Below, one piece after another: positions 1,966 to 60,303 of a stretch of 64,000 nt of DNA. Below the pieces are notes generated by a model. That model was not told the DNA's origin and did no database searches. It saw only the letters and a list, made by a program, of their open reading frames with translations. The translations under genes were made by a program, and so were the position numbers. Numbering within the stretch: the first letter of the stretch is position 1; every line of letters starts with the position of its first letter. The stretch lies in assembly GCA_037447605.1 (NCBI GenBank), contig CM074808.1, positions 3,100,001-3,164,000 on the forward strand, read 5' to 3'. The stretch is from Zygnema circumcarinatum SAG 698-1b (lineage: Eukaryota; Plantae; Zygnematophyceae).

Positions 1966-2916
1966 GGGTAGTGATATTTCCACCCCTTTTTTGGATCCAA
2001 ACACCCCTTCCCGGCCGGGCAGATTTCAAAAAGGATTAAAAACGGAAAATGCCTTTTTCACACCTTTTTGGAATCGATACCCACCCTCCATCGGCAGATT
2101 TTATTTTTGCGAAACAAGGAAAATGATAACCCGTCACCCCATTTTGAATATCCCGCCTACCTGAATTTTTTTTCACGCGTGCGGTCAATCGCAGCCGTCG
2201 ATTCCCTCGCAGATCGCAACACGGCAGATCATCATTTGATCTGCAGCCGGGCTCGGTCACAGCGAATGGCACGTGCCCACGTATCCCGCCAAAGTCACCT
2301 CAAAAGTTTGTCCGTACAAATGTCGTACGGTCGCAACTTTGAGGAGCCCAAAATTTCGTACATTGAGAGCTTGGACAAATCAAAATTTTCTACGTCAAAA
2401 ATGTAACACGTGGCAGCTGTTGATTGGCTGGGAGCTAACAATGACGAGATCTTGGGCCGAGGGACGCGCGCACTCGCACGTGCGATCCGGCTTTGACGGG
2501 ACTCGTGGGCGCTTTCCATTCGCTAAGATCGAGCCCGGCTGCAGATCGAACGGTGACCTGCAGTGGTGCGATCCTCGAGGAAATTGACAGCTGCGATTGA
2601 CACACACGTGTGAAGGACGGACACCCGCGAATGATCTCGTGGCGGACGGATCTTCAACTTCGAGCGGATTCGGGCTGGCAGATATTTCTTTCCCTCACAA
2701 AAAAAAAATTCAGGGAGGCGGGATACAGTATTCAAAATGCAGTGACGGGGTATCATTTTCCTTGGTTAGCAAAAATAGAATCAGCCGACGGAAGAAGGTG
2801 GGTATCGATTCCAAAAAGGTGTGAAAAAAGCATTTTCCGTTTTGAATCCCTTTTGAAATCTGCCCGGCCGGGAAGGGGTGTTTGGATCCAAAAAAGGGGT
2901 GGAAATATCACTACCC
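1966..2916. mobile_element. Non-autonomous long-TIR DNA transposon (Mutator/foldback-like), 951 bp
   Basis: Starts GGGTAGTGATATTTCCACCCC and ends with the reverse complement. Arms pair over about 1966-2172 vs 2699-2916 and again about 2173-2278 vs 2508-2612, with an extra ~85 bp in the right arm. An identical 8-bp TSD TTAAAATT sits at 1958-1965 and 2917-2924. No transposase ORF. Confidence 0.85.
2376..2427. promoter_or_regulatory. CCAAT/ACGT dyad element inside the transposon core (degenerate left half)
   Basis: CAAAT-N9-CTACGT-N12-ACGTGG-N9-ATTGG; the right half is a perfect inverted CCAAT-N9-CCACG. Confidence 0.5.
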
Positions 2917-3782: not shown

Positions 3783-3802
3783 ACGTGGCAGGCACCGATT
3801 GG
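3783..3802 (-). promoter_or_regulatory. ERSE-like half-site (CCAAT-N9-CCACG on minus strand)
   Basis: ACGTGG-N9-ATTGG about 70 bp upstream of the ATG at 3870, among other CACGTG boxes at about 3688, 3710 and 3770. Confidence 0.5.
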
Positions 3803-9798: not shown

Positions 9799-12700
9799 TT
9801 AATACACGGAGTCTGCCAGGGAGGGCAGACGGTTTATGAAACAGACTGCCTTGGTGGGCGTCTGCGTGCGGAGGGAGGGGTGGCGGAGAGCCCACCACCC
9901 TCCCACCAGCAGCACCGGCTGCACCGGTAGCACATAGAGCAGGATTGCAGTAAGAAGGCAGCCGAAGGTGAAGATGGAGGTGGCGCTGCACAGCACAACA
10001 AGAACAAGGCCCACATAAGACGAGTATAGAAACAAGACCATGAAACTGCCATGCGTGAACAATGAGAGGAAGAGTCCCTTTCCCCCCTCCAGCCCCTCCA
10101 CTCCCTCACTTTCTCCTCTCCCTCACTTTCTCCTCTTCCTCACTTTCTCCTCTCCCTCACTTTCTACTCTCCCTCACTTTCTACTCTCCCTCACTTTCTA
10201 CTTTCTACTCTCCCTCACTTTCTACTCTCCCTCACTTTCTACTCTCCATTACTTTCTACTATCCCTCACTTTCTACTCTCCCTCACTTTCTACTCTCCCT
10301 CACTTTCTACACTCCCTTACTTTCTACTATCCCTCACTTTCTACTCTCCCTCACTTTCTACTCTCCCTCACTTTCTACTCTCCCTCACTTTCTACTCTCC
10401 CTCACCGTGGGTCACGCCAGCTCAGCAGGGCCTGCACTCGTTCGCCGTAGCTCGCAACAGTGCCCATGGCGGTCTGCACCTCCGCCGCTATATTTTTCAA
10501 TCGCTCATATCGCCCTTTCAAAATCTGCAACAAGCAGTTGCGAGCAGAGTCATTCAGGTGGTTCGCAGGGAAGAGTCCCTCGAGTGAACGTCGAGAGCAG
10601 AGAGAAATGCAGAGAGATGGAAGGCTAGATGATAATATAAATGGCAACTGAAGCCTTTTCCAAATGCTAAGGCACCGACTGCCTGAAAACTCTCTCTCTC
10701 TCAGCATTACCAAAACCTTAAGCCCCGGGACGACCATTCTTACACGATAGTACTTGACAGGGTTCATGGTTGCCTCCTTGTTTCTGAAAGCAGTAGCCTG
10801 ATCCATCTCCTCTTCCAGCTCATCCGGGTCCTCCATCTCCTCCCCCTGTGACAGCTTTTGATCCATGAAGGGCGGAGCATCCGGTTTGGAACTATAGCGC
10901 TTAAGGCCAAGGAGGGAAGCATAGAGGAAGATTGTGGGGAGGACCAATCCCGGGTAATATATGAGGAAAGCATAGAGCAGGTGCACCAAGAGAGTGGTAG
11001 AGGGATGCTTCCACTCTCGCACAGCTTTCAGCCACTTGAAAAGGGAGATGGGGCCCGCAGCTACTGCCTGCATTTGAATGGCAAAGTTGGTTGCTTCAAA
11101 CATTTTTACAGCTTTCAGGGGCCAATCAAATGGTAAGCAGCGAAGAGAAAGGGGAAGGGAAGGGAAGGGCGAGGGAAAAGGCGAGAAAACGGGAAGCACA
11201 AAATTCGACTTTTTTGCTTTGGAAAGCTCACCTTTATTCTGAACATGTTTGCTTTGATCCGTCGCATGCTGAACATGTTCTCATCTGTGTCCAGCATGAA
11301 CCGGACCACTTCGGGCCGCAATGGCGGCTGACATTGGGCGAGATGCGCCGTCACCATCGCCATGGCTGCTGTGCGGAGAAGCTCCTTCTCCTTCGCCTCT
11401 ATGGGCTCTATGTAGTGAATGGGGGGCAGAATCGGCTGCACATAGCGTCTGACCACATCCAACGTTCGGATGCAGGAGAAGCGAATGGCGAGTTCGAGCT
11501 CTCCCATCTTCTTCACTCCCTGTCTGGTGAGGAGGAGGAGAGGGTGGGAGTGAGTGTACACGCGGTTGCTCTCTAAGCAGTTCAGACGGATGCGTACTTT
11601 CCCGATGGGCTGATCCCTCGCTCCGCCTGCAACTTCCAAGGGGCTGTTTCTGAGATGCCTGTGGGAAACACATGACGAAAACAGAGAGGGGAGAGAGCAG
11701 GGGACGAGAGGGAGAGACGAGGCGGGAGAGTCAAGCACAAAAGTGAGGGAGCAGAATCGGTTCATATCGTATAGTCTAATCCATCCAGCGAAAATTCCGC
11801 AGAAATCGTTACCTTCTCCAACCATTTCAGAAACAGAAAACCACAGCAATCGAAAACCCACCAGAAAACAAGCACCAAACCCCCGAATAACCAAAACCCA
11901 ACACTCCAAAACCCACTCCCTCCCCTCCGCACCTATTATCGCAGACAGCCACTGTGAGCACCGTGCAGGGCTCATAAACCTCCCACTCGTACTGCTCATT
12001 CCAACGAGGGTTCAGGGCCTCCCTCACTGTCCTTGTCCGCACCCACCGCCGGCCGTACCGCGCCACGGCGTACGCGTCCGTACACCCCCCCCCGCCGCCC
12101 ACCGCCGCCTTCATGGGCGCCAGGTGGCGCGCTCCGATTAGCCCCAGGACGAGGCGGCCGAGGGGTGGGCCCCACAGGGCGGGGGCGGAGGGCTGGGCGG
12201 AGGCCACGTGGCTGGGGGGCTCCTCCGCCACGTGGTAGCCGCCCTCCCAGCACAGGCGGGCCTTGAGGCGGCCGCCCGGGGGGGGGCCGGCTCGGGCTCC
12301 GCTCTTCTGGAGGGGGAGCCACCTGTAGAGAGAGAGAGAGAGAGAGAGGTAGTGGGGGAGGGGGAGGGGGAGGGGGAGGGAGAGGGGGGGAGAAGAGAGA
12401 GAGGAGAGGGAGAGGAGAGAGAGGGAGATGGAGAGGGAGAGGAAGAGGAGAGGAGGAGAGAGGAGAGGAGAGGGAGAGGAGAGAGGGAGAGGGAGAGGAA
12501 GAGGAGAGGAGAGAGAGAGGAGACGGAGAGGAGAGGAGAGAGGGAGAAGGAGAGGGAGAGGAAGAGGAAAGGAGGAGAGAGAGAGGAGAGGGAGAGGAGA
12601 GAGAGGGAGAGGGAAAGGGAGGAGAGGAGGAGAGAGAGAAGAGAGGGAGAGGAGAGAAGAGGGAGAGGGAGAGGAAGAGGAGAGGAGAGGAGAAGAGAGA

Positions 12701-15700
12701 GAGGAGAGGGAGAGGAGAGAAGAGGGAGAGGGAGAGGAAGAGGAGAGGAGGAGAGAGAGGAGAGGGAGAGGAGAGAAGAGGGAGAGGGAGAGGAAGAGGA
12801 GAGGAGAGAGAGAGAGGAGAGGGAGAGGAGAGAGAGGGAGAGGGAGAGGAAGAGGGGAGGAGGAGAGAGAGAGGAGAGGGAGAGGAGAGAACAGGGAGAG
12901 AGAGAGGCGGGGACGGGAAAGGCGGGGGGGGAAAAGCGGGATGGAGGTTCACGGGATGAGCAGGTGAGAGGTCGACGGGAAAGGAGTTTGGCATCGCAAT
13001 GACATAACAGTGAAGTAAAGGAGCTGGAAGGACGTAACTACCAGCTGACACTCATGGGCTCTGTTGAAAGGCTGTATGTTTGCGGTATCCCTCCACTGAG
13101 TACAGCTCAGTCTACAGAATTTACTACGAGTACTAATGTCCTCTGCTAGCTGAAAACCAAGTCAAACCACAAAATCTTCCTGCCTCCCTTCCCACCTGGA
13201 GGCTATGGGCGTGTGTGGCGAGAGGCGGGTCGCTATCTGGTGGAGGGGAATCTTCACCTGTCCAATGCTCTCCTCCTGAACACACAGCGGCAACCACCCA
13301 CAAACTTCACTTCCCCTCCCAGCATCCACAATCCCTCTCCTCACCCAATTATGCTCACTAAAAATTGCAAAGGCGGAGGGAAAATTCTTCAAACTTATTC
13401 TTCTGTTGCACCCCCGCTTGCACCCTCTGCCTAAAGGAAGGTCCCTACTGAGGTGGGTGTAAGCATGTCCACTATCTCCATAGTGAGCGCTCCCTCAAAG
13501 GGCTCCGCTGCCACCAGCAGGAAACTCTCGTTCCAAAGAGGGCTGTTGCCCTTGTTGGGCGCTACTCCCGTCTGCCTCTTCTGAGTCCCCAGCCGGACTT
13601 TCACTATCTGCCACAACCCCATTCCATTTTGGCACTCAGTTTTGAGTCCAGCAGACCAGGAGGACGCCTTGCTGAAGAAACAGTGACGAGCAACTTTCAG
13701 TGCATGACCAACTCCATAATCTCACCTCCTCTCTCTCTACCAGCCCACTGCGCTAATTCTCTCTTTTCCTGACCTCCCCGCTCCTTCCCACTCTCTCCAC
13801 ACTTCTCACCCTCCCCTTCTCGCCATTTCCCTTCCGTCTCCGCTTCTCTCTTCTCCTCCCCCTCCCCTCCTCCCCCTCTCCTCCCCCTCTCCTCCTCCTC
13901 TCCTCCTCCTCTCCTCCCCCTCTCCTCCTCCTCTCCTCCCCCTCTCCTCCCCCTCTCCTCCCCCTCTCCTCCACTCCTCCCTTGCCGTCTCCCACTCACC
14001 AGTTCCGGCATGCGCCTTGCGGCGGGCAGCGGCAGGCCCTCCGCCTCGACCGCGACCGCCCGCAGGTACCAGAGCCGCGGCGCCGCGTACCGCTGCGACC
14101 GCAGGTGGGCGGCGCCGCCAGTGTCGGACTGCCACGCGTCCGCAAAGGACTCGTCCGACTGGTACCCGAACCACACAGCGACTTGCACGTCACCTGAACC
14201 CTAACACCCCAAAACCCGTTCAGGAATAAAGAAAAGGGAAAGCGAAAAGGAGAAGGTGAAGGCAAGGAAGGGGAGGGAGGGGCGAGTATTTTAGGGTTCA
14301 GAGGTGGCACCTTTTACAACGCAGCTGCGGCGGTCTGTGGTCCTTCTCTGCAGGCGATACCAAACAGGCGGCACCGGACACTCTCCAGGAGTCCGTACAG
14401 GCACTCCCTTGAGGGGAATGCTGACAGCCCCCAAAAAATCATCTGCACCGAAGCGGTCCTGCACACACATTAGCAGCATTAGGGGCAGAACATGGTCTGC
14501 TTGTAATAACCAAACAAAGGCTAGTTGAGTTTCTGCGAAGTACTCCAATCTCGCCCCTGCAAGATGCCTCTCCCCCCCTCTCCCTCCTCTCTCACCTCAT
14601 GCCACACTGAGAGGTCCAAGACTGCTCGCCTCTCCCTCTGCTCTCCCTCCTCCAACTGCTCCGCCGCAAAAGCGAACACTTGGCGCCACTCGGGGTTGAG
14701 CTCTCTCGGGACCGTACGGCTGCATGCGCTAAGGGGGGGGAGGGAGAGCCGGACATACTGCCAAACACAAGTAGCAAAAATCGGCCATTACTTAGGGAAG
14801 GAGGAGGAGGAGGAGGAGGAGGAGGAGGAGGTCTCTTCGTTAGGTTTCAGGAGCTGGGACAGAGGCTCCTTCCTTCCACAATGAAATTAGGGTCGCGTGA
14901 AAATGAGACTGAATGAGAGTGGAAGGGAGGGAGAGCAAGAGTGGGAGAAAGACACACCGGATCGCTTGTTCCCATAATGATATCCTTCGCCATCAAGGAG
15001 CGAGCTTGCACAAGCTGCACGAAGACATACTGCACATTATCGACCAAGTCGTACATGGAACCGAACTTGTGGTCCTGAAAGGCACCCTCTCCTGACGAAG
15101 AGTGGGGAGTTTCCACGGCAGAGAGACAAGGAGAATCCTCTCTGAAATTACTTTCACCGGTAAGTACATAATCGGGATCGTCTGTATGCATGACTGAAAT
15201 TTTAATCCTGTAGAGAAGCAAAAAGCAAAGTTCTTGTGTCAATTGGCCACATTTAGTGCCCAGATTCCTTCTGTTGAACTCGTGCATAAAACTAGCAGCT
15301 AATTATAGATTGGTTTTATTGCCAAGAGCACGAAAAAGGCAAAATCGCGCACCCAAGCTGCCCTGAGACATGTGAAAATAATCCCCTTCTTTCCAAAGAC
15401 CGCCACTTCAGAGTTTCCTGTCCCCTCAGAGCAAGGCCTTCTGCCTCCAATTGGCTTGAAATGGGAACTCGGACTCGTCCCAGAAAAGCTTTTTGCTTCT
15501 GCTTTGGGCCGGCAACAACTTCAGTGAAAACATTAATCTCAATAACCTCTCGCCTATCTCCCGAAGGAGCGGCGCCACTCCACGAAGGAAAAGAAAATGC
15601 AAACTGCACATTCAAGAACGGGGGAAAAAGACCACAGCAGCTCAAATTTTGTGTTCCGCTGTAGGTAGCAACGAATAGGCAATGGGCAGCTTTGATTAGT

Positions 15701-16547: not shown

Positions 16548-16601
16548 CCAATCACAACGCGCCACGTACGTAAAGTTGCTGACGTGGTATGCTGCCATTA
16601 G
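16548..16601. promoter_or_regulatory. CCAAT/ACGT dyad element in the MCTP|IMP3 divergent region
   Basis: CCAAT(16548)-N9-CCACGT(16562)-N14-ACGTGG(16582)-N9-ATTAG(16597); one mismatch to the perfect dyad. Confidence 0.65.
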
Positions 16602-16757
16602 GGGGTGTCAGACTTAAAAAATTTCAGTACGCGTGTTCGTAAGTTTGACATCAGAACGAGTACTCCAGTATAATCGCGATCCTCCTGCGGCGGAGTACTT
16701 TCGTAACCTTTTTTTTCGTAACGCTTTTCGTAAGATTTTGTTAAGTCTGACACCCCC
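16601..16757. mobile_element. MITE, 157 bp, TA target-site duplication (Tc1/mariner, Stowaway-like)
   Basis: Perfect 17-bp TIR GGGGGTGTCAGACTTAA/TTAAGTCTGACACCCCC, TA at 16599-16600 and 16758-16759, and internal TTCGTAA repeats. Confidence 0.85.
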
Positions 16758-17050
16758 TATTGGACGATAATGTTTTCGCAAGCGCCGAGGCCGGACAGCT
16801 CCAAGCGGTTAGGGACGAGCCGTGCGGCCGTACCAACGGTCACTACTAGGACCGTACGGACAATCAGTAGGCCGTACCGTACAATATATGTCGGTGGACA
16901 GCGACGGGCTCGGACATGACGTCATCGTCAAATATCGACGTCATCTTCGTTGAAACCATACGGCTAACCGTACGGCCACATGATTTGTCTTTAGTGGATC
17001 GTACGGTAGGGCTCACAAAGGGTCCAGAATTTTGAGAGGGGCGAAAACTC

Positions 17051-32684: not shown

Positions 32685-34290
32685 TCAACCCGCCCAGGGC
32701 CACAAGACGATTGCCTTCACCATGTTGGTGGCGTTCACAACGAACATGGGGTCCATGAGGTGCATGTTCGAGTATGCGAGCTGCGCCAGCTGCGTGACGC
32801 CCACCATGATGAGCACATTTCGCATCCTCGAGAAGAGGCCTATCAGCTCGTTGACCACTAGAACCATTATCTCCTCCTGTCTCTCCATGGCTTCCACGGC
32901 ATCTGGCTGACTCTCCACTGCTAGGTTGGCCATCTGCAGCATTGGTGTTCGAGCTCGAAATGCGAGGATTGCAACAGCTCCATAATCTATGGCGGTGGCC
33001 ATTCCAGCCAGCTTTCCCAAATTAGGCGGCTGCATGTGGAACAGAAACAGCAGGCAAGCTTAGTCATAGGAGGTGACTCTGCATCGTCTGAAACCCCACG
33101 CTGTGACTTTTACAATACAAGCACGCATCGCTTGACAACTAAAAACTTGAACTTAAACTCTGCCCACTTACCTTTGTTGCGAAAGCAGAAATAAGAGGTG
33201 TCGCTACACCTCGGACGAGTGCAAGGCCGATACAAGCGATGCCGAGATGGGAGAGGACTTTTGCGAGCGCCTTCACTCGGGCACGCTTCTGCCTCTCTAC
33301 ATATTTGAACACACCCAAAAGCTCTCCACTGATCTCAAGTACCAGTGGCTGTCGAAACTCCAGTGTCTGTGTGAACACACAAATGCAACAGCTTCGTTGA
33401 GTCTTTAAGGAGGCAGTCTATCGTGGCCTTAGGTATCCAATGTGGTAGCTTTCCCCTAAGTTAAACTTGAAGATTAACCAGGAAAAAAAAAGCTGCGGGA
33501 AAGCTCCAATGAAGTAACCCCTCAAAAAATTACGGCCACAACTCAGCCAGGGCTGATCTGCACGATGATGTACCCTCGAAGACTGGTTACCCGTTAAGAC
33601 AAGCAGCTACTTTCGGAAACTAATATTCCACAACCATGGAAATCTGCCGTTTTTCAAGTGTTCTACTTCCAAAAAACCCATGAATAACAGCACTACTATT
33701 AAGGTTCTCTTTGTCTCTACCTTTATCTTCACAGATTCAAGCGACGCCTTCCCCTCTGTCGATTCATCAGCATGCAAACCCTCCGTCCCGGTAACCCTAA
33801 ACTCTGCGAGCGCTTGCCTTTCCTGCAGGTCAGAGCTGGCTGCTGCCATTGAAACCCCTATTCCTGAAAGCTTCAAAAGGTCTGCGGACGCCATAGCTGC
33901 AACTTCCATCTTTAAATTCGAATCAAGGTTCTCTCCTCCTCCACTGACCACCTCCTGTGAAGCTAAGTTCCCTTCATTCACCCTCGTCCGAAAGCAACCC
34001 TTCCCACAATGCTTTTCTCCCCGGAAACGCCCGCTGACTTCCAACGTTTTTTGCGTAATATCTGCAGGTTGAAGCTTCCAGGACACTGCCTCTAAGCTCC
34101 GAGAAACAGAAAAACCTGACCTGTGCTTCCTCCCAGCCACTCCTGCTCGCACAGGCGTTGTCTCCACTCCTGAGGCGCAATTGTGGAGGCTCCCCCTCCT
34201 TTTTCCCCTTTTCCGGTGCTCGATATCTTCCGCCATTTTCACTGACGCGTGGCAGTAGAAGGCGTGCTGCCGATGTTCCATGGCCGCCAT
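32685..34290 (-). CDS. Hypothetical membrane protein, possibly plastid-targeted (3 exons)
   Basis: Long first exon from gccATGg at 34290 to about 33668 ending in hydrophobic TLIVVLLFMGFLE; second exon TLEFRQPL...HLGIACIGLALVRG...FATK|gtaagt; third exon PPNLGKLAG...to stop at 32685. Family not recognised. Confidence 0.6.
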
Positions 34291-34414
34291 GGCGAGGGCT
34301 CGCGAGGAGGCGGTCCTCCTCGCCCTGAGAGAGAGAGAGAGAGAGAGAGCGAGGGGCGAGGGGGTTCGCTGCTCCGCTCGTCAGAGCTCGCACGGAGGGA
34401 GAACCAAGTAGGAA

Positions 34415-34468
34415 CCAACCACAGAGCTCCACGTCGGACAAATTGATGACATGGCAAACTCTGATTCG
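34415..34468. promoter_or_regulatory. CCAAT/ACGT dyad element (degenerate) in the hypothetical|DEAD-box divergent region
   Basis: CCAAC-N9-CCACGT-N14-ACATGG-N9-ATTCG; exact spacing with 3 mismatches across 22 specified positions. Confidence 0.55.
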
Positions 34469-34874
34469 TCCACGCTGTCCAAGGAGAGAAGGCAGACATG
34501 CCGTACGGTCGTTTCTGACCGTACATATTGTTCATTATGCGCCGTACTATCCACAAAAGTGTGTGTACGAACATTCCAAAACGTATTTCAGAAATGCGTC
34601 TCAACTTCTTGGGCAGCCTAAAAAAGGTCGGCCGGGAATAATCTAACGATCAGAAAATACCCAGAAAAAAAAACCAAAAAAAAAAAAAAAATCACAAAAA
34701 AAAATCGCAATACTGTACTGTATCAATGTGATATGTACGTACAGTATGGACTTGGACGAGGTGCTGTACGAAGGATGGCGGTTCTGGGAAGACTCGAACC
34801 CACGACCTCCTCCGCGATAGCCCTCCCGTCGAGAGCGCACCATGGCGGCGGGCGGGCGCGCAGAGGCCACAGCC

Positions 34875-37800
34875 ATGGCGGGGAGGGAGGGCAGCAGGAG
34901 CAGGAGGAAGCGGAGGCGGGGAGAGCAGGGAAGAGAAGAAGAAGGAGAAGAGAATGGAGAGGACGAGAATGCGTTCTTGGCTTTACGCGGTAGTAATGTG
35001 CAGACCAATGCGGTGGCTGCATATGGCCCTCCTGCAATGCAGCAGCGATTGCAAGGTAGGTTGTGTGTAGGAAAGGAGGCAGGAGAGGATGATTTGGATT
35101 TCTTGGGGGAGTGTAGAATTACATGTGCAGCTTGTCAGGGTGAAAGATTTTAGGGTTGGTTTCAGTCTTTAGGTTTGTGGAGTTTATAAGTAGGGGGACA
35201 GGGGGAAAGCGGGGGGGTGGTTGTATAGAATGCTTAGGAATTTTACAGGAGCTAGGGCGCGTGGTTTATATTTCCATTTCATCAGTTGTTCAAACAATGT
35301 ATTCAATAAATCGTTACTTGTGAGCCTTGAGTTTGAGTAAATAACTGTTTGTCTTCTTTCTGAATCAATTGCCGTAAGGCACTCATCGAGTGCACCAGCC
35401 AAGAATAATTGAAAGACTTCGCTGAGTAGAATGTTAGCTGGAATAGTCAATATCACAGTGTTCGTCGCACAAGATACATCATCTGTTATCATCGGAGTAG
35501 GAATTTCAGTTGCAGACCATTGGGCGTTCAAATTCGACACATTGATAAGCACAACTTTCCTCCACACGCCGCTCATTGTTAGACCCGATGCAATCCATCC
35601 TTTCTCTCCTCGCCTTGAATGACGAGCTCCTTTTTTGTGGTCGAACGTAAGTTGGTGGATCGCGTTTACCTGTCTTTAAATGTATCATTAGAAAGGTTCT
35701 TCTCTAAAGATGTGGTTTTTTCGCTTGCCTTTTAGCTTCACCTTTAATTGACACTCTGCCAAGACTCTGTAGAAGTAATCAATCATTGATTTGCATGCAA
35801 CATACTCTATTAATCCACATGGGCGAGTATGTGGTTCCTATATGCACTAAAACGTATGTCATCCGATGGCTGGGCCTTGACCAGGCGACAGCACTTGGCA
35901 AGAGGCTGCGCGAATACGGTCGCTTCATGGTATTCGAGTGGAAGGCCAAAATATTCTTCCGCCCATCACTTCTTTCAGTGCATGTGTCCGCGATGACTTC
36001 GTTTTGGCTCAGTTGGAGAGGCAAGGCTGCAAAGTACGTTCCGGTTGGCGAATACGGTCAACTGTCCAAATTCGTTTCAATATCTTACAACGCTTGCAGC
36101 ATGACAGCTATATTATCAATCAGCGACCTGATATTGAAGTTTGCATTCTATTTGGAAAGATGGTCATAACTGCAAGAAGAGCTTAGCATGCCTGATAAGG
36201 TGTTTGGCAAGAGGCAGATATCATTATATGGCTTTCGCCAACGGTATTTCCACCTCCTCCACGCCTTAAAACGTGTGGTCTAGTGATTACAGAAGAAGAT
36301 CTCTGTTTTTACCTGTAGTCAAGGTTGGTATACTTAAATAACAATGGCCAAGTACAGTTATAAAATTCATCCTTCACTTTTTGTGGACTGGTACAGGAGC
36401 CCACACCTGTGCAGATGCAGGTGTTGCCATGTGTCATGCACGGCCGGGACATGATGATTCAAGCAGAGACAGGTGCAAAGGAAGCGAACCTTGTTTTTTA
36501 AAGTGTTTTTTAACTTTGAGAGGACCTAGAGTTTATTCTTTTTTACCTTATGCATATAACAAGTGCAGAAAGCGTGAAATTTATCCGTCAGCAGAAGATG
36601 ATGTCAGCAATCTTAATCCGGTCACCATGTCATTGATATTTTTTATGTGTTTTTACCTCTAGAGACCTTCGCAACATTTTAACTTCGTTTTTTAAATTAA
36701 TCGTTTTTTTTTTTATGCAGGCAGTGGGAAAACACTGGCTTATCTACTTCCCTTGCTGAGTCTGCTGGAATCGCGCAGCTCTAATCAGGCAGGTGACTGC
36801 TGGTCCATCAACTCGAAAATGTGACTTCATAATCTATAAGGGGCATGTGCTTTCCATTGTCCTTCTCTTTCTTTGACTTAATCTACAGCCTTCAAGATGT
36901 ATTCTTGACCTCCAAAATCAGATCAGGTCTCAAACAGATCAGACATTTCGACTGCATCCGGCTTACACGATGTATGGGTATCCTCTCCTGTTGTGCAGGA
37001 GGGGGGCCCTTAGCCCTAATTGTGGTCCCAACCCGTGAACTAGTGGAGCAAGTCTACTCCCAGCTCACCCTCCTAATGCCAAATGGCAATTCCTCTGCAT
37101 CAGACAATCCTCCTCCTTATGCTTCTCCTACAGTTGCTGACGTGGCCGCCAACTCGGCACCCTCTACTCCCTTCCGACCTGCTGTTTCCGGAGGTTCTGT
37201 GCAGCAGACAGTATCGCAAAATCTGATACCCAATTCTGCTTATATTCCGTCTCAATCACATATGTCGCAACCATGTTTTCAGTTCAATCAAAGTCCGTCT
37301 CCGCACCACTATTTGGGACAAAGTGCTCCTCTTCCTAGTCACGGCTACACCAGTCACCAATATGGCCCATTTTCACAACCCTTCACTGATCAAAGCTTAA
37401 CTAACTACCCTTCAAACTTCAACCAGAACTCGATCTGGGCTTCCCAAAACGTTTCCATCTCCCATACTCACGGCATGCCTTATCAGCAATATCCATTTCC
37501 CCCTTCTCTCTCCTCACCTTATCCTGGCCACCCTTACGTATATGAAACCCATTCTCAAACTAACGTAGTTCCGCCACAGTTTTCGCCTGCAGCACCCCCT
37601 CCTTCAAACCCTAACAGCACATTCTGCCCTCAATCTCTTACCTTAGAGCATGACATAGAAGAGAGTGCTGCTCCGCCATCCTTACTCGACTGCAGAAAAC
37701 GACACAAAGTACTGGGAGCTGTGGGTGGTGTCCCTATCGGGGGACAAGTAAGGGCTTTGAAGGCTGGTGTGGACGTTGTGGTGGCGACACCCGGCCGCCT

Positions 37801-39061
37801 GCTTGACCTCTTGGAAAGAGGAGTGCTGTCATTGGGCCACGTGGCATATCTTGTACTTGATGAGGCTGACCGGATGCTGGGAGAAGGAATGGACGAGCAG
37901 CTGCGTCAGGTGGGACTTTCTGGGCTCCAATTGATTTTAGCGCATTTAAATTTGGACGTTTTTTTACCTTTTTCTTGGCAATTAAGTGGAGAATGTAGTC
38001 TTTGTAGAGGAAAGAAAGGGTGAGCTTGAGCCTCTGTTTGGTTTTTTATAACTTGTTTACTGTCCCTTTTTTTTTGTCCCGTTCTTGTGATTTAGATTCT
38101 CAGCCGTGTGCCAGAGCAGAAGCGACAAACAGTCCTTGTGAGTGCGACAATGCCCTTTGGACTGCAGCGGCTTGCCATGTCAGCATTGGCGGACCCTGTC
38201 AGCGTGACAGCTGGCGAGGTTGGCAGTCTGACAGACTCTGTGCACCACGAGGTCATCTTCCTGCACACCTTTATGAAGAAAGAGAAGCTGCTTCAGGTGA
38301 TACCATGGTGCTGGAATCTCTTGTAACAAATATCGGAATATATCGTAGAGGGATTCGAGTGCAATTTAATCGGGGTTTGGGTCCTTTGAAGAACCTTAAT
38401 GAACGAACTGTTTTTGGACCTCCTTTTTGCATGCGCAGATTTTAAGGAAGACGGAACGTCCTCCTGTGATCATCTTCTGCAACTCGGTGAGAGCAGTTGA
38501 CAGCTTAGTGCAGGTGTTGAGGAACGAGCAGTTCCACGTGGCAGGCCTGCACAGTGCCAAGTGTCAACCTTTCCGATTCCGCTGCATGCATGCCATGCGC
38601 GAAGGAAAGCTTGATGTGCTCGTGGCGACAGATGTCGCCTCCAGAGGCATCGACCTGACAGATGTCACACGTGTGGTGAACTATGAGCTGCCCGACTCCA
38701 TTGAAGACTATATCCACAGATGCGGTCGAACCGGTCAGCAGCTTTTCTTCATACTATGTGACTCCTCGCTTTGAAGGTAGTCCTAGGCTTTGAATCACGT
38801 CCCAAATGTCCATTTCGTTTTGAATCTGATTAAGCCGTTTGCACGCGGCTATATCTGGCAGGTCGTATTGGGAAGAAGGGAGTTGCCACTTCCTTCTTAA
38901 CACTTGAGTGCACGATCGCAAAGGAGCTCCGGCAGCTTCTTCAACAGAGCTGCCAAGAAGTTCCCTCCGAGCTTCACAACCTGCGTCAGTTTGGAGGAAG
39001 GGTGATAAAGACGGACCTCGGGGACATGTCTCTGAGCAGCGGGAAGTTCTCAACGGACTAA
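34875..39061 (+). CDS. DEAD-box RNA helicase with a large low-complexity insertion in RecA domain 1
   Basis: Exons 34875-35055, 35885-36033, 36397-36472, 36721-36792, 36999-37909, 38096-38296, 38439-38733, 38862-39061, all in phase. Motifs: Q (EPTPVQ), I (AETGSGKT), Ia (PTREL), GG, Ib (TPGRL), II (DEAD), III (SAT), V (TDVASRGID), VI (HRCGRTGR). Confidence 0.93.
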
Positions 39062-49694: not shown

Positions 49695-50224
49695 GGCTGC
49701 CGGCAGTAAAAGGCCTCCATCCTGCTCCACCCTCCTCCACCCTCCTCCACCCTCCTCCACCCTCCTTGCCTACTCCCTTCCTTCCCCCCCTCTCCTCTCT
49801 CCCCGCTTTCCCTCTCTCTTTCTCTTTCTCTCTCTCTCTCTCTCGCTGACCTCCCGCCGGCCTCTCTCCCCCTTTTCCCTTCACGACCGCACCGGAAACT
49901 AAAATGTTCGTCGTACCGTAAAGGTTCACCAAATCGATACACATTCTGAATTTTATTTTTATTTTTTCATTTGCCCGTCTCTGCTTAAAAGTTGTTTTTA
50001 TGACGAAAGCACGCACAAAGAAGGCGTCCTATTGGCTCTTTGGAAGAGATTTTTTTTTTTCCCATCAAATTTCAGCGTTCTGGCGTTCTAAATTTTTTGA
50101 GAAAAACATTTTGCGTTTAACAAAAAAATATCTGAACAGGATTTATTGTAATAAATTACTTTCCTGTCCTATCAATGAAACGGAAACCACGGAATGGGCA
50201 GGTCTCTGATCTCCAAGGCGTAGA

Positions 50225-50278
50225 CCAATGAGAGATTGCCACGTATGCATGATGATACACGTGGCGTTCTATGAGTGG
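50225..50278. promoter_or_regulatory. CCAAT/ACGT dyad element in the riboflavin synthase|BSD2 divergent region
   Basis: CCAAT-N9-CCACGT-N14-ACGTGG-N9-AGTGG; one mismatch. Confidence 0.65.

Positions 50279-50403: not shown

Positions 50404-50474
<71 letters not shown>
50404..50474 (+). repeat. (CT)n microsatellite in the BSD2 5' region; another (CT)n(CA)n at about 46706-46770
   Basis: Directly visible. Confidence 0.95.
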
Positions 50475-50477
<3 letters not shown>

Positions 50478-50503
50478 TGCCTTTCGCCTGCGAGGTAGCA
50501 ACC

Positions 50504-52303
50504 ATGGCGGCCGCTGCTTCTGCTGTGTCGAACTCCCTGACTTCCTCGTTCGTCGCTCCTCCTTTGAGAACTTCAGAAGAATCCAATGCTCTTAACTGCG
50601 CCACAAGGACATCTCAGCCAAAGTCTTCGAATAGATTGCAGTCAGTTGTTACTTCTAGAATATCGCTAGAGCCATTTCGCAGGAAAGGGAGGCTTGTATC
50701 CTGCAAGGTAATGCTGTTCGTTTTCTTGCACCGTGCTTCCCCATGTTTTATGGAATCGTGGTTTATTTCTTGAAGACCATGCCTTAGAAAACTCTGAGGC
50801 ACGGACTGGAGCATCGTTTGGAACATACGCAGCCTCTCGCATGGATGGTCTTTGCGTGTCTCGCATGGATGGATATGATTTGGATGTGATTAACTGGTTC
50901 AGGCTTGACATAACCGCTGAGGCTTTGGGTTACTGGGAGATTGTAATGTGTGGTTGGGCATGGACGTACGGTATTGTGCACGGCCGATCTTTGTTTGTTC
51001 ATGCGCTGATATGGACTCTGTGTCACAGGACGGTATAATTATCAGAAGTAATGCATAGGCAACTCAAGCGAGTCATTTGCTGACCTCCAGGGAATGCTAC
51101 GTATGAGATGAATGTGTCTGAGCTGAATGTAATTATTATGCAGTGAGGTCAGCTTTCAGCCTCTGCTGGTATGAAGAAGCGGCCGACTCAGGTGGATCTG
51201 GCAGGCTTGCTAGTATTCTCCCTGGAGTTCATCATCGTTGACATGTTGTTCCTACGTGATGCAGGTGAACAAGGACAATGTTCCATTAGGCACGGCGTCA
51301 GGGGTTGAAAGGAAAAGCATTCTCTGCGCGGATTGCGATGGGAATGGTGGGTACCTTGAACTTTATTATTCAGAGATTTATGCCAGTGTTTCTGCAGATG
51401 ACTTCGAAGTACTAATCAAACGTCAGATTTGTGAAAAAAATTGTACAAACGTCGAATCTGATAATATAATAACTATAAGGGATGTGATGAACACATGTTT
51501 GCATATGGATTGGTAGCTGAAAAGTTCCACTGATTTCTCTCGATTCACCGAACTACAGGCCTGGTTTCTATAATTTGTTGCCTAATTCTTAGTTTTGCTG
51601 TACGCATTGTTGGCTTTCATAAAAGTGGCTCCCATCTGACGGCACGCGTCGCTATTTCTATGGTTTTTTTTTTAAATTTCGTTCGGCCAGGAGCTGTTTT
51701 ATGCAATCAGTGTCATGGCGATGGCCTCAATACGGAGGATCATTTCCAGGGTCGCTTCAAGGCTGGCACCACCTGCTGGTTGTGCAGGTATCACAGTCAT
51801 GGCCTTGTGGACTCCTGCGCTGTTAGATGATGTTTGACGAGCTTTAATGATCATAAGATACGCCCTTGAGTCGGATGTAACACCTTAGCAAGGATAGGAA
51901 TGTTTGTTTTGGTTATGCAGGCATGCTCAAGGTACTTTCTTTGGGAAAAAACTCACATCTGTTTGCTGTTACACATTCTCATTTTTATGCTTGTTCCAAT
52001 TTTGTGAATGCGACGTTACTCAATGTTACCAGCATTAACAGCCGGAGTTTGCAGTTGATTAGTGTAATCGGGGTTCGTCGTTTTGTTTGGTAAGCGTTTG
52101 CACGAAGATAGAGGTTACTAATGTCAACTACATAATAAGAGGCATTCATCCCTGCAGACAGTTTCATTTTAGTGTGCTTCGCACGTTTGACATTGATTCT
52201 GTTGATTCTCGGCCTGGTGTTCAGGGGGAAACGACAAATGTTGTGCGGAAGCTGCAATGGAGCAGGTTTTGTCGGAGGCTTTATGAGCGCAGCAGATGAC
52301 TAG
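50504..52303 (+). CDS. BSD2: BUNDLE SHEATH DEFECTIVE 2, DnaJ-like zinc-finger Rubisco chaperone
   Basis: Exons 50504-50707 (transit peptide), 51265-51346, 51691-51787, 52225-52303: LCADCDGNG|AVLCNQCHGDGLNTEDHFQGRFKAGTTCWLCR|GKRQMLCGSCNGAGFVGGFMSAADD*. Confidence 0.93.
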
Positions 52304-52511: not shown

Positions 52512-54508
52512 CTAACTTGTACACCTTCCTCCGTGAGATTTCATAATCAATTTGGGTTCTGTTGCCATCGGGTCATCTCTCCCGAAGCAATGGCCAATAG
52601 CACGATGGAAACACGGCATGGAGGCCCCCAGGGCGGGAGGAGATGCAGGGACAGAGAGACATGAGAAGCGGGCACCCAGTTTTGCTAAGTTTAATGGGGT
52701 TATGTGGCGGAAGCACAGGAAATCTTGCAGGGAATTTGAGTTTCTTGGTAAGAACGGAGCCAGAACGGGCAACTGCACCAAGAGCAGGTCGCAACGGACA
52801 GGAATGACTCCAAGTTCGGAGAGCATCTTCGCTTGAAGTGGCTCGACCCTGATAGGAAAGGGCTGATATGCGTAACCTTTTGGTCGATGAAGAAAATAAT
52901 TAACGGCACTTGTAAACTTTGTAACGATTGAAATGAGCAGTTCTGACTGATCTCCCTTCTTGCTACTTGTCATGCAAGCTTTTTTTTTTTTTTCACCCCA
53001 CAAACTTGACAGCACGGTTGACACAAGCACCAGCACTGACTTGTCCTTACATGGCTAAAGCCCTGGCGGCACCAGTCAAGTCATTCCAGCGTAGCACCAG
53101 TGGAGTGATGTTGTGCAGCATGTCAACTGGAAGCGCACTGTCAGGCGTTGCAAAATTCCTCGAAGGGTCAGATATAGCTCTTCCCGACGTCGAAGTATGG
53201 CAAACAAGTGCATTTCCATAGTCCCCACCCGTTTCCAGTCGTTGCCAGTGCCAGTCTCCCAATTAATGACGGCTACTGATACAACGTTTTTGGAAGCTCA
53301 ACTTTTTGCATCGTTCTGGAAAAGGATTGGAGAGAAGCAAATTAGTTAAAGGTGGGACAGCATAAGCAGAGGCGAAATCCTATGTCTGATTTCAAATAAT
53401 GTCGTCCTTCCCCCGTTTCGTTTGTCACCCTTTCAGTTGGTTCAATTCAGAAAATGTAAGTGAATCATTAATTCAATTCTACAGTTCCACCACTTAAAAG
53501 GGCTCAAAATGTTTAATACGCCTATTGCCGTATGAAGTGTTCTTCTATATTGGACAATAATGAGGCTACCTGCTTTCAGGATTGATCAATGGCAATGTAC
53601 TATACAAAAAAAACTATTTACAATGGTAGCTTTCTTTGGAAAAACTTCTTCCTCCGTTCCCGTCCAATACCGTGCCCTCACTCTTCTGGCTCAAGATGTC
53701 CTGGAAGCGGCGCAGGGCGATACCCTGTCAATCTCTGTTCAAGGAAACAGAGACAATCAAACAAAGCTCATTTGTATTAGTTCTACAAGAAAGCAGGACC
53801 TCTCTATAGCTCAAAACGAAGGTCGAATGTTCCTTCCTGGTGTGCAGATGCTGTAACAAATCTTCTTTTTTTCGCTGAAAAGTATCGCTTTGTGCAAAAA
53901 CGAAGATTTTCTTCGGTTTCACCAATTAACAAGCCAGCATATACGAAATACAATGCACAAAACATATACCTGAAATTCTGACGGTGTCGAGACAGAATCT
54001 AAAATTCGCAGAGCTGACGTGACCTCGACATCGCGGTCATCTGCGAGCAAGGATAGGCGTCGCGCCCTCTTGGTTGATGCGTCGGACATCTCTGCAGTCG
54101 ACGTGCTTGCTGTCCATTGTCTGCTTCCTTCGCTGCTGGCCGCAGAGGTTGCAGCCATGAGACGCTCACAGATGTGACAAGGGAGCGGTGCTTGCTGGCT
54201 GTTCATTGCAAGTTTTTGCAGATATTCTGCAGATCCTTGTTTGATGTTCAGGAATACAGAAAGTTTCCGATGTAATCAGGATTTAACTCAATACGGTCAT
54301 TCAGTAGTAGCAGTCCTGCTTGCAAAATATGTTTTATTCCTCTCTTCACCCTAAAACCCGCAAGGACGATGCAGCGATCAGCAGAAATGTATGCGAGTTT
54401 CAGTTGACATTTGTCACTGCTCCGCTCTTTGCTACAAGCTGCAATGACGCTGTAAAAAGAATGCTTTGGAAGTGCAGTGCAAGAGAGCTGGCGGCCGGCG
54501 GCAACCAT
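52512..54508 (-). CDS. Probable multi-exon hypothetical gene; structure unresolved
   Basis: Exon-like segments with splice signals (e.g. EYLQKLAMNS...STPSEFQ|gtatat at about 54230-53970; ...ARALAM|gtaagg at about 53050) and a perfect dyad element 90 bp upstream. I could not build a consistent spliced ORF. Confidence 0.3.
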
Positions 54509-54595: not shown

Positions 54596-54649
54596 CCAAT
54601 CACATATTGCCACGTCAGAAGTTGTGCAAACGTGGCAAGTCGTGATTGG
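54596..54649. promoter_or_regulatory. Perfect CCAAT/ACGT dyad element
   Basis: CCAAT(54596)-cacatattg-CCACGT-cagaagttgtgcaa-ACGTGG-caagtcgtg-ATTGG(54649); all 22 specified positions match. Confidence 0.7.
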
Positions 54650-54816
54650 CTCGCGCTCGCTCGCTTTTTCTCAATTGCCCTCCAGTTGACCGTCACGTGT
54701 GCGCTTGTTCTGCAAACGGTTCACATGCGGTGCCGTACAGTGCAGCGTTCTGCCGTAGACTGAAGGAGCTTTGCTGACGGCGGGAAAGTTTGAAAGCAGT
54801 TTTTTGTCGGAATTTC

Positions 54817-55160
54817 CTATTTACACAATTAAGGGGAGTCAGACCTTGACCATCGCTTACGAAATTCCCGAATTCCTTTTACTAAAAGTCACTTCTTTCG
54901 TGTACGAATTCCTGGTCGGGATCCGCGGCTCCGCCCTATACAGCCGTACCGAAATGCGTACCTAGTCAATGCTGAATTCGCCCGACAGGCTTACGAAATT
55001 GATTTGGCGATTGTCAAGGTCTGACTCCCCCTATTTTTTTGGCTAGATTCGCACCTTTAAAACGAAAAAAAAAAATCTGAAAAGGCAAAAAACCTTAAAA
55101 TCAAATCTGACCGGGGGAAAAGGTGTGAATCTAGCCAAAAGTGCTGTGTAAATAGACCCT
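54817..55160. mobile_element. Short TIR element (host of the nested MITE), left end eroded
   Basis: After removing 54832-55033, the left arm CTATTTACACaatTAttttttGGCTAGATTCgCACCTTT pairs with the right arm AAAGGTGtGAATCTAGCCaaaagtgctGTGTAAATAG (55118-55155). Confidence 0.6.
54832..55031. mobile_element. MITE, 200 bp, TA TSD, related to the 16601-16757 element
   Basis: TIR GGGGAGTCAGACCTTGAC(c/a)ATCGC at both ends, TA at 54830-54831 and 55032-55033, and internal CTTACGAA repeats (= TTCGTAAG of the other copy). Confidence 0.8.
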
Positions 55161-56188
55161 ATGATTGAATACAGTACCCTTTACTGTAACTAATTATTAG
55201 TCAAAGAAAAGATGTTTGTTTGAACTCACGATGGCAAGGCCATCAAATGTACGTCAAAGTCAAGGGCCAAGCTGATAAAGTCAAGGTCTGGTCTGGTCTG
55301 GTCTGGTCCGGTTCGGCCTGCTCATCTTGTATGGCAGTTTGGGCAAGTTCTTCAGATTTGCGGTATTTGGTTCCATGTTGAGGCAAGGCGGCGGGGTTCC
55401 ATTGGAAATTGGACCAACCTTCCAGACTATGGTCAACATTTGGTTCCAAGCCATAGAATATTCGCTTGACTTACGAAGATTAGCTTGTCAAGACTTGTCA
55501 ATAAACTTGGTATTCGTTATACTAGGGGGTAGGGTTCAGACTACCCCCACTACTTAAGGTAAAAAGAAAAATGAAAATGTAAAGATTGGCATGGATGAAA
55601 TGAATTAGTGTCGTTCTCAAATCAATACAAAGTTAGAAACAAGGCTACGACTAAGACTAACTAGACTAATACTGACTAACCAAGACTGACTACAACTCTC
55701 GCCCCATCATGGAGACGCACCCTTAATACTATGTTAAGGCTGACGTCACAAAACGGATTTTTTTTTACTGTGACGCAATGGCGGCCCAACGACCCGTCCC
55801 CGACGAAGATTCCCAAAATCTAAGTCCCCAACTTGGAAGATATTTTGGACCCCCAGCGGAAGGCAGCACCAGACGCCGCCACGTGGCGTCACGTGTCGGT
55901 GCTGGAATCTCCTTCCCGCTCTTCTTGGAGCCAAGAATCCCAGAGCCCACCAATCAGGAGGAAAACGGGCAGAAATAAAAACGTTTGCATTCAAGTTCAA
56001 ACTCTGCGCCTCCCGACATTTGGCACGGACAAAATTTTGCGGAGCAGAGGTGGCGCCCTTTAATTGGGCTCTTGTTTGAAGAATTTCTGCTCCTGGAACT
56101 GCCCGGAGCTCCCGCGTCCTGCCCGGCTGCCGCTTGGAGCGGTCCGGCCTCTCCGCTTGTCGAAAACATTGCAGTACTGGAGCATCCT

Positions 56189-56241
56189 CCAATGGCAGCA
56201 AGTTACGTAGCACCTTTTCTTACGTGGCACGTTGTGATTGG
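56189..56241. promoter_or_regulatory. CCAAT/ACGT dyad element upstream of GapCp
   Basis: CCAAT-N9-TTACGT-N13-ACGTGG-N9-ATTGG, about 295 bp upstream of the ATG. A tandem G-box pair lies at 55878-55896. Confidence 0.6.
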
Positions 56242-56534
56242 ATAATGGCTAAGCTGGGCCACGCGACCTTGCCCAGCTTCCACCAGTTTTTGGGAGTAAT
56301 CTTGTACTTGGAGAAGTACCTTGTGCCGGGCGAAAGCTTGCGTGGAGAAACATTGTCACCAAAATTTGCATCTTGAAGAACTTTTGCTCCGCAAAAGCTT
56401 GATACTGTACTCTCTAGAAAAGCCAAAGTCCCAGTTTGCTGGCTGGCTGGCTGGTCTTGAAAAGAAGCTGCACCCTTCGGTCTCGCTTGGAGCGACCATA
56501 TCCGAAAGTTCCGTTAGTTTCTGGAGTGGGAGCT

Positions 56535-60303
<3,769 letters not shown>

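What the first reader, a model, noticed from the sequence alone, without database searches (positions are those of the whole stretch)
54596..54649. Recurrent 54-bp dyad promoter element CCAAT-N9-CCACGT-N14-ACGTGG-N9-ATTGG in nearly every divergent promoter
Seen in sequence: a perfect copy here, plus copies at 16548-16601 (1 mismatch), 50225-50278 (1), 34415-34468 (3), 56189-56241 (2, N13), 2376-2427 (2, N12, inside a transposon) and a half-site at 3783-3802. Spacers are largely unrelated while motifs and spacing are kept, which argues for protein-binding constraint rather than recent duplication. Seven perfect CCAAT-N9-CCACG half-sites occur, against about 0.1 expected in 64 kb at uniform composition (2 x 64000 / 4^10; the local CACGTG excess raises this somewhat). 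All full copies outside the transposon lie about 90-300 bp upstream of a start codon; five of six head-to-head regions have one. Established: CCAAT-N9-CCACG is the ERSE bound by NF-Y plus a bZIP (ATF6 in mammals, bZIP28 in Arabidopsis). Inference: the inverted pair with a fixed central spacer is not an arrangement I recognise, and the neighbouring genes (GapCp, BSD2, MCTP) are not typical UPR targets. It may be a lineage-wide NF-Y/bZIP higher-order platform defining or coordinating bidirectional promoters.
Basis: partly seen in the sequence, partly recalled or inferred. Interest (0 to 1): 0.82.

Follow-up and report, generated by a model that had tools for sequence, protein, structure and literature searches.

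The report
Mirror-image CCAAT/ACGT promoter module
A 52-54 base mirror-image pair of a known two-part DNA switch (a CCAAT box exactly nine bases from CCACGT) sits just upstream of several unrelated genes in this land-plant-related alga; it looks like a reusable promoter building block, partly spread by small transposons, and not the ER-stress switch it is in animals and Arabidopsis.

Summary
The window has 7 perfect CCAAT-N9-CCACG half-sites, against 0.12-0.13 expected (P about 1e-10). N9 is the only spacing that peaks. Facing half-sites are separated by 14 (four times), 13 or 12 bases.

Positions outside the search pattern support protein binding. All 13 half-sites have C/G then A/G after CCAAT, the flank I recall for NF-Y sites. 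In the arm that was not searched for, motif positions are kept 50/55 and spacer positions 23/45.

The ACGT cores are mostly CCACGT followed by a non-G base, often GCCACGT. That fits a bZIP site better than a palindromic G-box or E-box.

The neighbouring genes are an MCTP, BSD2, a plastid-type GAPDH and a DEAD-box helicase. None is a typical UPR target.

New in this window:
- The "1-mismatch" copy at 16548 is a perfect dyad split by a 159-bp MITE.
- The 16548 and 56189 copies share about 100-113 nt by descent.
- The 2376 copy lies in the unique centre of a 951-bp foldback transposon with an 8-bp target duplication.

So copies arise partly by duplication or transposition, and the motifs are then conserved. 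The claim of a role in "nearly every divergent promoter" is unproven. The scan has already found this module on several other pieces of this genome. I found no paper describing it.

The parts
54596..54649 (.). Perfect 54-bp dyad CCAAT-N9-CCACGT-N14-ACGTGG-N9-ATTGG
   Evidence: It lies 264 nt upstream of the furthest RNA contig end (54332) of a minus-strand spliced transcript, and 390 nt from the ATG of that ORF at 54206.
16548..16599 (.). Left 52 bases of a dyad; its last two bases (GG) are now at 16762-16763, displaced by a MITE
   Evidence: joining 16599 to 16762 gives a perfect 54-bp dyad. It lies 178 nt upstream of the MCTP ATG at 16370 on the minus strand.
16600..16758 (.). 159-bp MITE inserted into the right CCAAT box; ends AGGGGGTGTCAGACTTAA, flanking ATT at 16597-16599 and 16759-16761
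   Evidence: The paralogous copy at 56189 shows the uninterrupted sequence GCTGCCATTGGA.
16762..16808 (+). Flank shared with the 56189 locus, including GAGGCCGGACNGCTCCAAGCGG
56189..56241 (.). 53-bp dyad (N13 centre; left arm has TTACGT instead of CCACGT)
   Evidence: It lies 294 nt upstream of the GAPDH ATG (56535). The main RNA contig in run X18 starts at 56314, 73 nt from the dyad edge.
56130..56188 (-). Flank shared with the 16548 locus (the paralogous module covers 56130-56241 on the minus strand)
   Evidence: local alignment from the CCAAT to ...CTCCAAGCGG, about 86% identity.
50225..50278 (.). 54-bp dyad (right arm CCACT instead of CCAAT)
   Evidence: It lies 226 nt upstream of the ATG (50504) of a gene whose later exons match BSD2_CRD (E = 5e-16).
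34415..34468 (.). Degenerate 54-bp dyad (3 mismatches; N9 and N14 spacings kept)
   Evidence: It lies between a minus-strand ORF with ATG at 34290 (125 nt away) and a candidate plus-strand first exon at 34842, upstream of DEAD/Helicase_C exons. The candidate first exon itself has no Pfam match.
2376..2427 (.). 52-bp dyad (N12 centre, 2 mismatches) in the unique central part of a foldback transposon
1966..2916 (.). 951-bp foldback element: arms 1966-2294 and 2491-2916 (82-97% complementary), flanked by the 8-bp direct repeat TTAAAATT
3783..3802 (-). Solitary perfect half-site CCAAT-N9-CCACGT, 68 nt upstream of an ATG at 3870
   Evidence: The gene there is not verified.

Best explanation
The dyad is a protein-binding cis-regulatory module of proximal promoters.

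It consists of two ERSE-I-type composite sites facing each other. Each most likely binds one NF-Y trimer on CCAAT(C/G)(A/G) and one bZIP dimer on (T)GCCACGT, held nine bases apart. The two ACGT cores lie 16-18 bp centre to centre. The result is a symmetric platform of about 54 bp, roughly 70-270 nt upstream of transcript starts.

In this alga the module serves unrelated, non-UPR genes (MCTP, BSD2, plastid-type GAPDH, a DEAD-box helicase). It therefore acts as a general or broadly responsive promoter block, not as an ER-stress-only switch.

New copies arise at least partly by duplication or transposition of longer segments. Afterwards only the motif positions and the spacings are conserved.

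Shown here: the enrichment, the geometry, the extra conserved flank positions, the kind of neighbouring genes, the shared descent of two copies, and the transposon-borne copy. Inferred: the identity of the bound factors, activity as a promoter, and any bidirectional function.
For: Enrichment and exact spacing:
- 7 against 0.12-0.13 expected, with only N9 peaking.
- Central spacers are 14 (x4), 13 and 12.

Constraint at positions that were not searched for:
- C/G then A/G after CCAAT in 13/13 half-sites, against 33/114 for all CCAAT in the window. This matches the NF-Y flank consensus as I recall it.
- A at +4, and TG before CCACGT.

Other sequence evidence:
- Partner arm: motif positions kept 50/55, spacer positions 23/45, P = 1e-5.
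- Core type: CCACGT is followed by a non-G base in 10/13 half-sites. The other CCACGT in the window are followed by G in 49/58 (P = 4e-5). GCCACGT is the ABRE/ACGTGGC type.
- No conserved hairpin: z-scores are -0.4 to -2.8 in the imperfect copies.

Position and neighbours:
- Copies lie 125-390 nt upstream of ATGs.
- The main GAPDH RNA contig starts 73 nt from the dyad in X18.
- Neighbours were identified by Pfam.

Literature on the layout:
- ERSE = CCAAT-N9-CCACG, bound by NF-Y plus ATF6/XBP1. The plant pERSE is served by bZIP28 with NF-YA4/B3/C2 (PMC3645738).
- Human NF-Y sites lie 10-12 bp from CACGTG, also in LTR12 repeats, and precisely spaced double CCAAT boxes occur in promoters (PMC4889920).
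Against: - There is no binding or expression test.
- RNA contigs of two runs (X7 from 55960, X8 from 56058) run through the 56189 dyad, so the transcript start there is not settled.
- One dyad is split by a MITE, and the MCTP gene next to it still looks intact. The full dyad is therefore dispensable there, or the insertion is recent.
- One copy sits in a transposon and two copies share descent, so part of the excess comes from copying and not from independent selection.
- The sample is only 13 half-sites in one 64-kb window.
Confidence: 0.7

Rival explanations
1. The dyads are debris or cargo of mobile elements (foldback/hAT-like elements and short modules). These insert preferentially near gene starts, and the host makes no use of them.
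For: - The 2376 copy lies in a 951-bp foldback element with an 8-bp target duplication.
- The 16548 and 56189 copies share about 100-113 nt at about 86%.
- Small transposons are frequent in these promoters: the MITEs at 16600-16758 and 54826-55035.
Against: - Outside that one pair, the flanks of the promoter copies are unrelated (7-15 of 40 positions in the mirrored flanks; no BLAST matches).
- No terminal repeats or target duplications were seen around the promoter copies.
- Motif positions in the arm that was not searched for are kept 50/55 against 23/45 for spacers. Neutral decay would not do this.
- Unselected flank positions match the NF-Y consensus in 13/13.
Confidence: 0.12
2. It is a true stress regulon element: ER stress, or ABA/desiccation/light acting through ABRE-type bZIPs with NF-Y. 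The neighbouring genes are genuine inducible targets in this lineage.
For: - The layout is exactly ERSE-I.
- Several cores read CCACGTCA/TGACGTGG, which is UPRE-like, or GCCACGT, which is the ABRE core.
Against: - The neighbours are a plastid glycolytic enzyme, a Rubisco assembly factor, an MCTP and a helicase.
- The density is about one dyad per 10 kb of this window.
- Other pieces of the genome carry it too, which is too broad for a UPR regulon.
Confidence: 0.13
3. One unknown palindrome-reading factor (or a bHLH/USF-like factor with NF-Y) binds the whole dyad, not NF-Y plus bZIP.
For: - The central spacing is fixed at N14.
- Human NF-Y pairs with USF/MAX on CACGTG at 10-12 bp.
- CACGTG is three times over-represented in the window: 47 against 15 expected.
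Against: - Only 3 of 13 cores are CACGTG.
- The central spacer varies from 12 to 14.
- A solitary half-site exists at 3783.
- Conservation splits into two separate blocks that match known NF-Y and bZIP sites.
Confidence: 0.05

Closest known systems
ERSE-I / plant pERSE (CCAAT-N9-CCACG = CCAAT-N10-CACG), bound by NF-Y plus ATF6/XBP1 in mammals and by bZIP28 with NF-YA4/B3/C2 in Arabidopsis (PMC3645738)
   Same: Identical motifs and exact 9-base spacing. NF-Y-type flanks after CCAAT. Some cores extend to the UPRE-like CCACGTCA.
   Different: Here two elements face each other at a nearly fixed 12-14 base distance. They are about 55 times over-represented and sit before non-UPR genes. The mammalian and Arabidopsis elements I know of are single or tandem and confined to ER-quality-control genes. 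Binding and stress response are untested here.
Human NF-Y/USF-MAX module (CCAAT 10-12 bp from CACGTG), also carried by LTR12/ERV9 repeats, and precisely spaced double CCAAT boxes in promoters (PMC4889920)
   Same: Same CCAAT-to-ACGT-core distance. Paired CCAAT boxes with ACGT-core sites between them. Partly carried by repeats and transposons. A general promoter role for NF-Y.
   Different: The human preferred CCAAT-CCAAT distances are 19, 24-28, 35-37 and 43 bp, and the paper does not describe an inverted arrangement. Here the two boxes are inverted and 47-49 bp apart. The cores are mostly not palindromic E-boxes (10 of 13).
Plant NF-Y/bZIP cooperation on ABRE or G-box elements (for example L1L/NF-YC2 with bZIP67, NF-YC with HY5 or ABFs); recalled from knowledge, with PMC3602376 seen only as an abstract
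   Same: GCCACGT is the ABRE core ACGTGGC, and NF-Y is the partner.
   Different: To my knowledge, no fixed-spacing composite site or dyad is defined for those cases.
Transposon-dispersed regulatory modules (MITE or LTR-borne transcription-factor sites)
   Same: One copy lies in a foldback element with a target duplication. Two promoter copies share a module of about 100-113 nt.
   Different: Most promoter copies show no transposon structure and share only the motif positions.

Membership tests
ERSE-I composite element | CCAAT and CCACG on one strand, separated by exactly 9 bases | tested here: met
   7 exact matches, and only N9 peaks.
ERSE-I composite element | The CCAAT box is of the NF-Y type (C/G then A/G after the pentamer) | tested here: met
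   13/13 half-sites, against 33/114 of all CCAAT in the window. The consensus itself is recalled from knowledge.
ERSE-I composite element | Sits in promoters of ER chaperone or ER-quality-control genes | tested here: not met
   The neighbours are MCTP, BSD2, GAPDH and a DEAD-box helicase.
ERSE-I composite element | Confers induction by ER stress through ATF6/bZIP28-type factors bound next to NF-Y | not testable with these tools
   Needs tunicamycin/DTT RNA-seq and binding assays.
NF-Y / bHLH (USF, MAX) CCAAT-E-box module | Palindromic CACGTG 10-12 bp from CCAAT | tested here: not met
   The spacing fits, but only 3 of 13 cores are CACGTG.
Transposon fragment (MITE/foldback) | Terminal inverted repeats and a target-site duplication around each copy, with flanks shared between copies | tested here: inconclusive
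   Met for the 2376 copy. A shared module exists for 16548/56189. Not seen for 54596, 50225 or 34415. One 64-kb window cannot reveal repeat families.
Hairpin or cruciform-forming palindrome | Arms stay complementary, including the spacers, across copies | tested here: not met
   Self-complementarity is 28-38 of 52-54 positions, and only at motif positions. Fold z-scores are -0.4 to -2.8 in the imperfect copies.

The most novel reading that the evidence does not exclude
In this streptophyte alga a symmetric platform of two NF-Y trimers and two bZIP dimers is a main, lineage-specific architecture of proximal and bidirectional promoters. It is seeded across the genome by foldback/hAT-like elements and short duplicated modules, and then fixed by selection. 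This would be a case of transposon-driven promoter standardisation, built from an element that land plants and animals reserve for the ER-stress response.
Probability: 0.3. Interest if true: 0.8.

Novelty: new variant of a known kind. Interest (0 to 1): 0.58.

Why it matters
If the dyad is a general promoter block, three things follow:
- An element known as a stress-specific switch (ERSE) can be used far more broadly in a relative of land plants.
- It would give a compact, symmetric, sequence-defined promoter unit for studying cooperative NF-Y/bZIP binding and bidirectional transcription.
- It would offer a small synthetic promoter part for streptophyte algae.

The transposon-borne and duplicated copies also give a concrete route by which such a promoter grammar spreads. 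The idea is directly testable by DAP-seq and by reporter assays with spacer changes.

Tried and rejected
- **Hairpin or cruciform reading.** Rejected. Only the perfect copy folds well, and spacers do not co-vary.
- **Palindromic G-box/E-box (bHLH) reading.** Rejected for most copies.
- **Perfect dyad in metagenome contigs (centre N12-15).** 0 hits. This is uninformative, because those contigs are mostly prokaryotic.
- **Orthologous promoters in relatives.**
  - The protein databases gave no genome contigs of streptophyte algae. The Spirogloea hit has no DNA on record, and the Ceratopteris and Adiantum look-ups failed.
  - Only MCTP loci of Actinidia, Calypogeia and Sphagnum were obtained. They hold 0 half-sites in 74 kb. 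At the alga's per-kb rate 8 are expected (P = 3e-4). At the alga's 55-fold enrichment over their own motif counts 4.5 are expected (P = 0.011).
  - L004 and L005 are near copies of L003 and were not counted.
- **Identity of the 227-aa ORF next to the 34415 dyad.** No homologue and no Pfam family.
- **Exon-ORF search with the MCTP C-terminal exon.** It found only short contigs.
- **Literature searches for the dyad in algae or bryophytes.** Nothing found.
- **Bacterial promoter/terminator scan.** Irrelevant here and empty.
- **Gene models for the whole window.** Not obtainable, so the head-to-head count was not checked.

Full report
**1. Observation**

The perfect 54-bp dyad is at 54596-54649, exactly as described. 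CCAAT-N9-CCACG occurs 7 times on both strands. Dinucleotide-preserving shuffles give 0.12 on average and never more than 1. Given the window's own 114 CCAAT and 144 CCACG, 0.128 pairs are expected at any one spacing. That gives P = 1e-10 for 7 pairs, and P = 2.6e-7 if only 5 are treated as independent.

Across spacings 0-60, N9 has 7 pairs and every other spacing has 0 or 1. All seven sites continue as CCACGT. Facing half-sites with up to two mismatches each are separated by 14 (four times), 13, 12 and once 20 bases.

**2. Anatomy beyond the searched motif**

I aligned the 13 half-sites. Several positions that were not part of the search pattern are also constrained:
- The two bases after CCAAT are C/G then A/G in 13 of 13. 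Among all 114 CCAAT in the window, only 33 have both.
- An A is preferred at +4.
- TG precedes CCACGT in most copies.

From my own knowledge, CCAAT(C/G)(A/G) is the flank preference of NF-Y.

The ACGT core is followed by G in only 3 of 13 half-sites. The remaining CCACGT in the window are followed by G in 49 of 58 (P = 4e-5). The dyad cores are therefore a different population from the abundant palindromic G-boxes; CACGTG occurs 47 times against 15 expected. They read as GCCACGT (the ABRE core ACGTGGC) or CCACGTCA (UPRE-like). These are bZIP-type sites and not bHLH E-boxes.

**3. Constraint versus copying**

I used the perfect half-site only to locate each dyad, then looked at the partner arm, which was not selected for. 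The partner keeps 50 of 55 motif positions. It matches the first arm's spacer at only 23 of 45 positions (P = 1e-5).

Single-strand folding gives no support for a conserved hairpin. The z-score is -5.5 only for the perfect copy and -0.4 to -2.8 for the others. Self-complementarity is confined to the motif positions. This pattern fits protein binding.

**4. Copies are not all independent**

This is new for this window.

(a) The 16548 and 56189 loci are paralogous. With the insertion described next removed, a local alignment runs from the first CCAAT through the whole dyad. It continues past the dyad into the flank, to ...GAGGCCGGACNGCTCCAAGCGG. It covers about 100-113 nt at about 86% identity. 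In both loci the adjacent gene (MCTP, GAPDH) lies on the same side of this oriented module.

Its ends read AGGGGGTGTCAGACTTAA, and ATT flanks it on both sides. It is inserted into the right CCAAT box. Removing it restores a perfect 54-bp dyad that matches the paralogue's GCTGCCATTGGA. A related MITE lies 177 nt from the 54596 dyad, at 54826-55035.

(c) The 2376 copy lies in the unique central part of a 951-bp foldback element (1966-2916). Its arms are 82-97% complementary, and it is flanked by the 8-bp direct repeat TTAAAATT. It is therefore a transposon that has inserted here.

For the other copies, flanks are unrelated (7-15 of 40 mirrored positions; no BLAST matches).

**5. Surroundings**

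Pfam identifies the following genes:
- An MCTP on the minus strand: PRT_C at E = 8e-25, with a C2 domain in the first exon and ATG at 16370.
- BSD2: BSD2_CRD at E = 5e-16, ATG at 50504.
- A GAPDH with an N-terminal extension: ATG at 56535, introns confirmed by RNA joints.
- A DEAD-box helicase.

None is a classical UPR gene.

Distances from the dyad edge to the nearest ATG:

| Dyad | Nearest ATG | Distance (nt) |
|---|---|---|
| 16548 | MCTP, 16370 | 178 |
| 50225 | BSD2, 50504 | 226 |
| 56189 | GAPDH, 56535 | 294 |
| 34415 | minus-strand ORF, 34290 | 125 |
| 54596 | transcribed minus-strand ORF, 54206 | 390 |

For RNA I had assembler contigs only. In run X18 the abundant GAPDH contig (depth 1199) starts at 56314, 73 nt from the dyad, and the contig upstream of it has depth 3.9. 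In runs X7 and X8, contigs run through the dyad from 55960 and 56058. The transcript start is therefore likely but not settled.

Left of the 54596 dyad, a spliced minus-strand transcript reaches at least 54332. A head-to-head gene pair is plausible only at 34415.

**6. Other organisms**

The perfect dyad (centre N12-15) is absent from the metagenome contigs. This says little, because those contigs are mostly prokaryotic.

No genome contigs of streptophyte algae could be reached through the protein tools. MCTP loci of Actinidia, Calypogeia (a liverwort) and Sphagnum (a moss) total 74 kb and contain no CCAAT-N9-CCACG. At the alga's per-kb rate 8 are expected (P = 3e-4). At the alga's 55-fold enrichment over their own motif counts 4.5 are expected (P = 0.011). 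This is weak evidence, from one gene family only, that land plants do not share the excess.

**7. Mechanism proposed**

Each arm is an ERSE-I-type composite site. In mammals, NF-Y on CCAAT and ATF6/XBP1 on CCACG act together. In Arabidopsis, bZIP28 acts with NF-YA4/B3/C2 on CCAAT-N10-CACG (PMC3645738). In human promoters, NF-Y sits 10-12 bp from CACGTG bound by USF/MAX, also within LTR12 repeats. Precisely spaced double CCAAT boxes with E-boxes between them mark a promoter class there (PMC4889920).

I therefore propose two NF-Y trimers and two bZIP dimers on a symmetric platform of about 54 bp. The ACGT cores lie 16-18 bp apart and the CCAAT centres 47-49 bp apart. The platform sits in the proximal promoter of many ordinary genes.

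The factors, the activity and any bidirectional function are inferred and not shown. New copies arise partly by transposition or duplication (section 4), and the motifs are then conserved (section 3).

**8. Comparison and novelty**

The half-site meets the sequence definition of ERSE-I, but it fails the functional-context criterion because the neighbours are not UPR genes. It does not meet the E-box criterion of the NF-Y/USF module.

I found no description of the inverted, fixed-spacing pair in the searchable literature. I rate it a new variant of a known kind.

The scan has already reported the same module on several other pieces of this genome (s1-360958, s1-355315, s1-337038, s1-358258, s1-343952, s1-353297 and others). 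My independent tests here agree with their reading. They add the NF-Y flank rule, the partner-arm test, the non-G-box core, the MITE-split dyad and the module of about 100-113 nt shared between two promoters.

**9. Verdict**

This is a real, strongly non-random promoter-proximal module. Its most likely identity is a mirrored NF-Y/bZIP composite site used as a general promoter block and partly dispersed by mobile DNA (confidence 0.7). The claims about "nearly every divergent promoter" and about coordinating bidirectional transcription remain open.

Noticed in passing
window 16600-16758 and 54826-55035: Two members of a MITE family with ends AGGGGG(T/A)GTCAGAC. The first sits inside a CCAAT box. 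The region 54773-55363 has RNA contig depth of about 1000 with many loose ends, so the family is high-copy and present in RNA assemblies. One loose end shows another copy flanked by ...CATGCCATT.
   Followed up: partly
window 1966-2916: A 951-bp foldback element with an 8-bp target duplication (TTAAAATT, hAT-like length). It carries the dyad in its unique centre and a 1-mismatch half-site (2263-2282) in one arm.
   Followed up: partly
whole window: CACGTG occurs 47 times against about 15 expected. CCACGT is followed by G in 52 of 71 cases, so palindromic CCACGTGG G-boxes are abundant in their own right, separately from the dyad cores.
   Followed up: partly
window 55960-56314: In two of four runs the GAPDH RNA contigs extend 250-350 nt upstream through the dyad, past a second near-half-site (56048-56067, CCAAT-N9-CCACCT). 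This could be an alternative upstream start or an overlapping divergent transcript.
   Followed up: no
window 36845-38023: A DEAD-box helicase exon carries a long proline/serine/glutamine-rich low-complexity insert between the conserved PTRELA-type region and the DEAD motif.
   Followed up: no
window 50420-50480, 49700-49900, 34300-34400: (CT)n/(GA)n microsatellites lie between dyads and start codons, in likely 5' UTRs.
   Followed up: no
window 11115-13051: Two long minus-strand ORFs (294 and 351 aa, GC about 0.60) inside the MCTP gene span have no Pfam match. They may be a lineage-specific insert between C2 domains or non-coding sequence.
   Followed up: no
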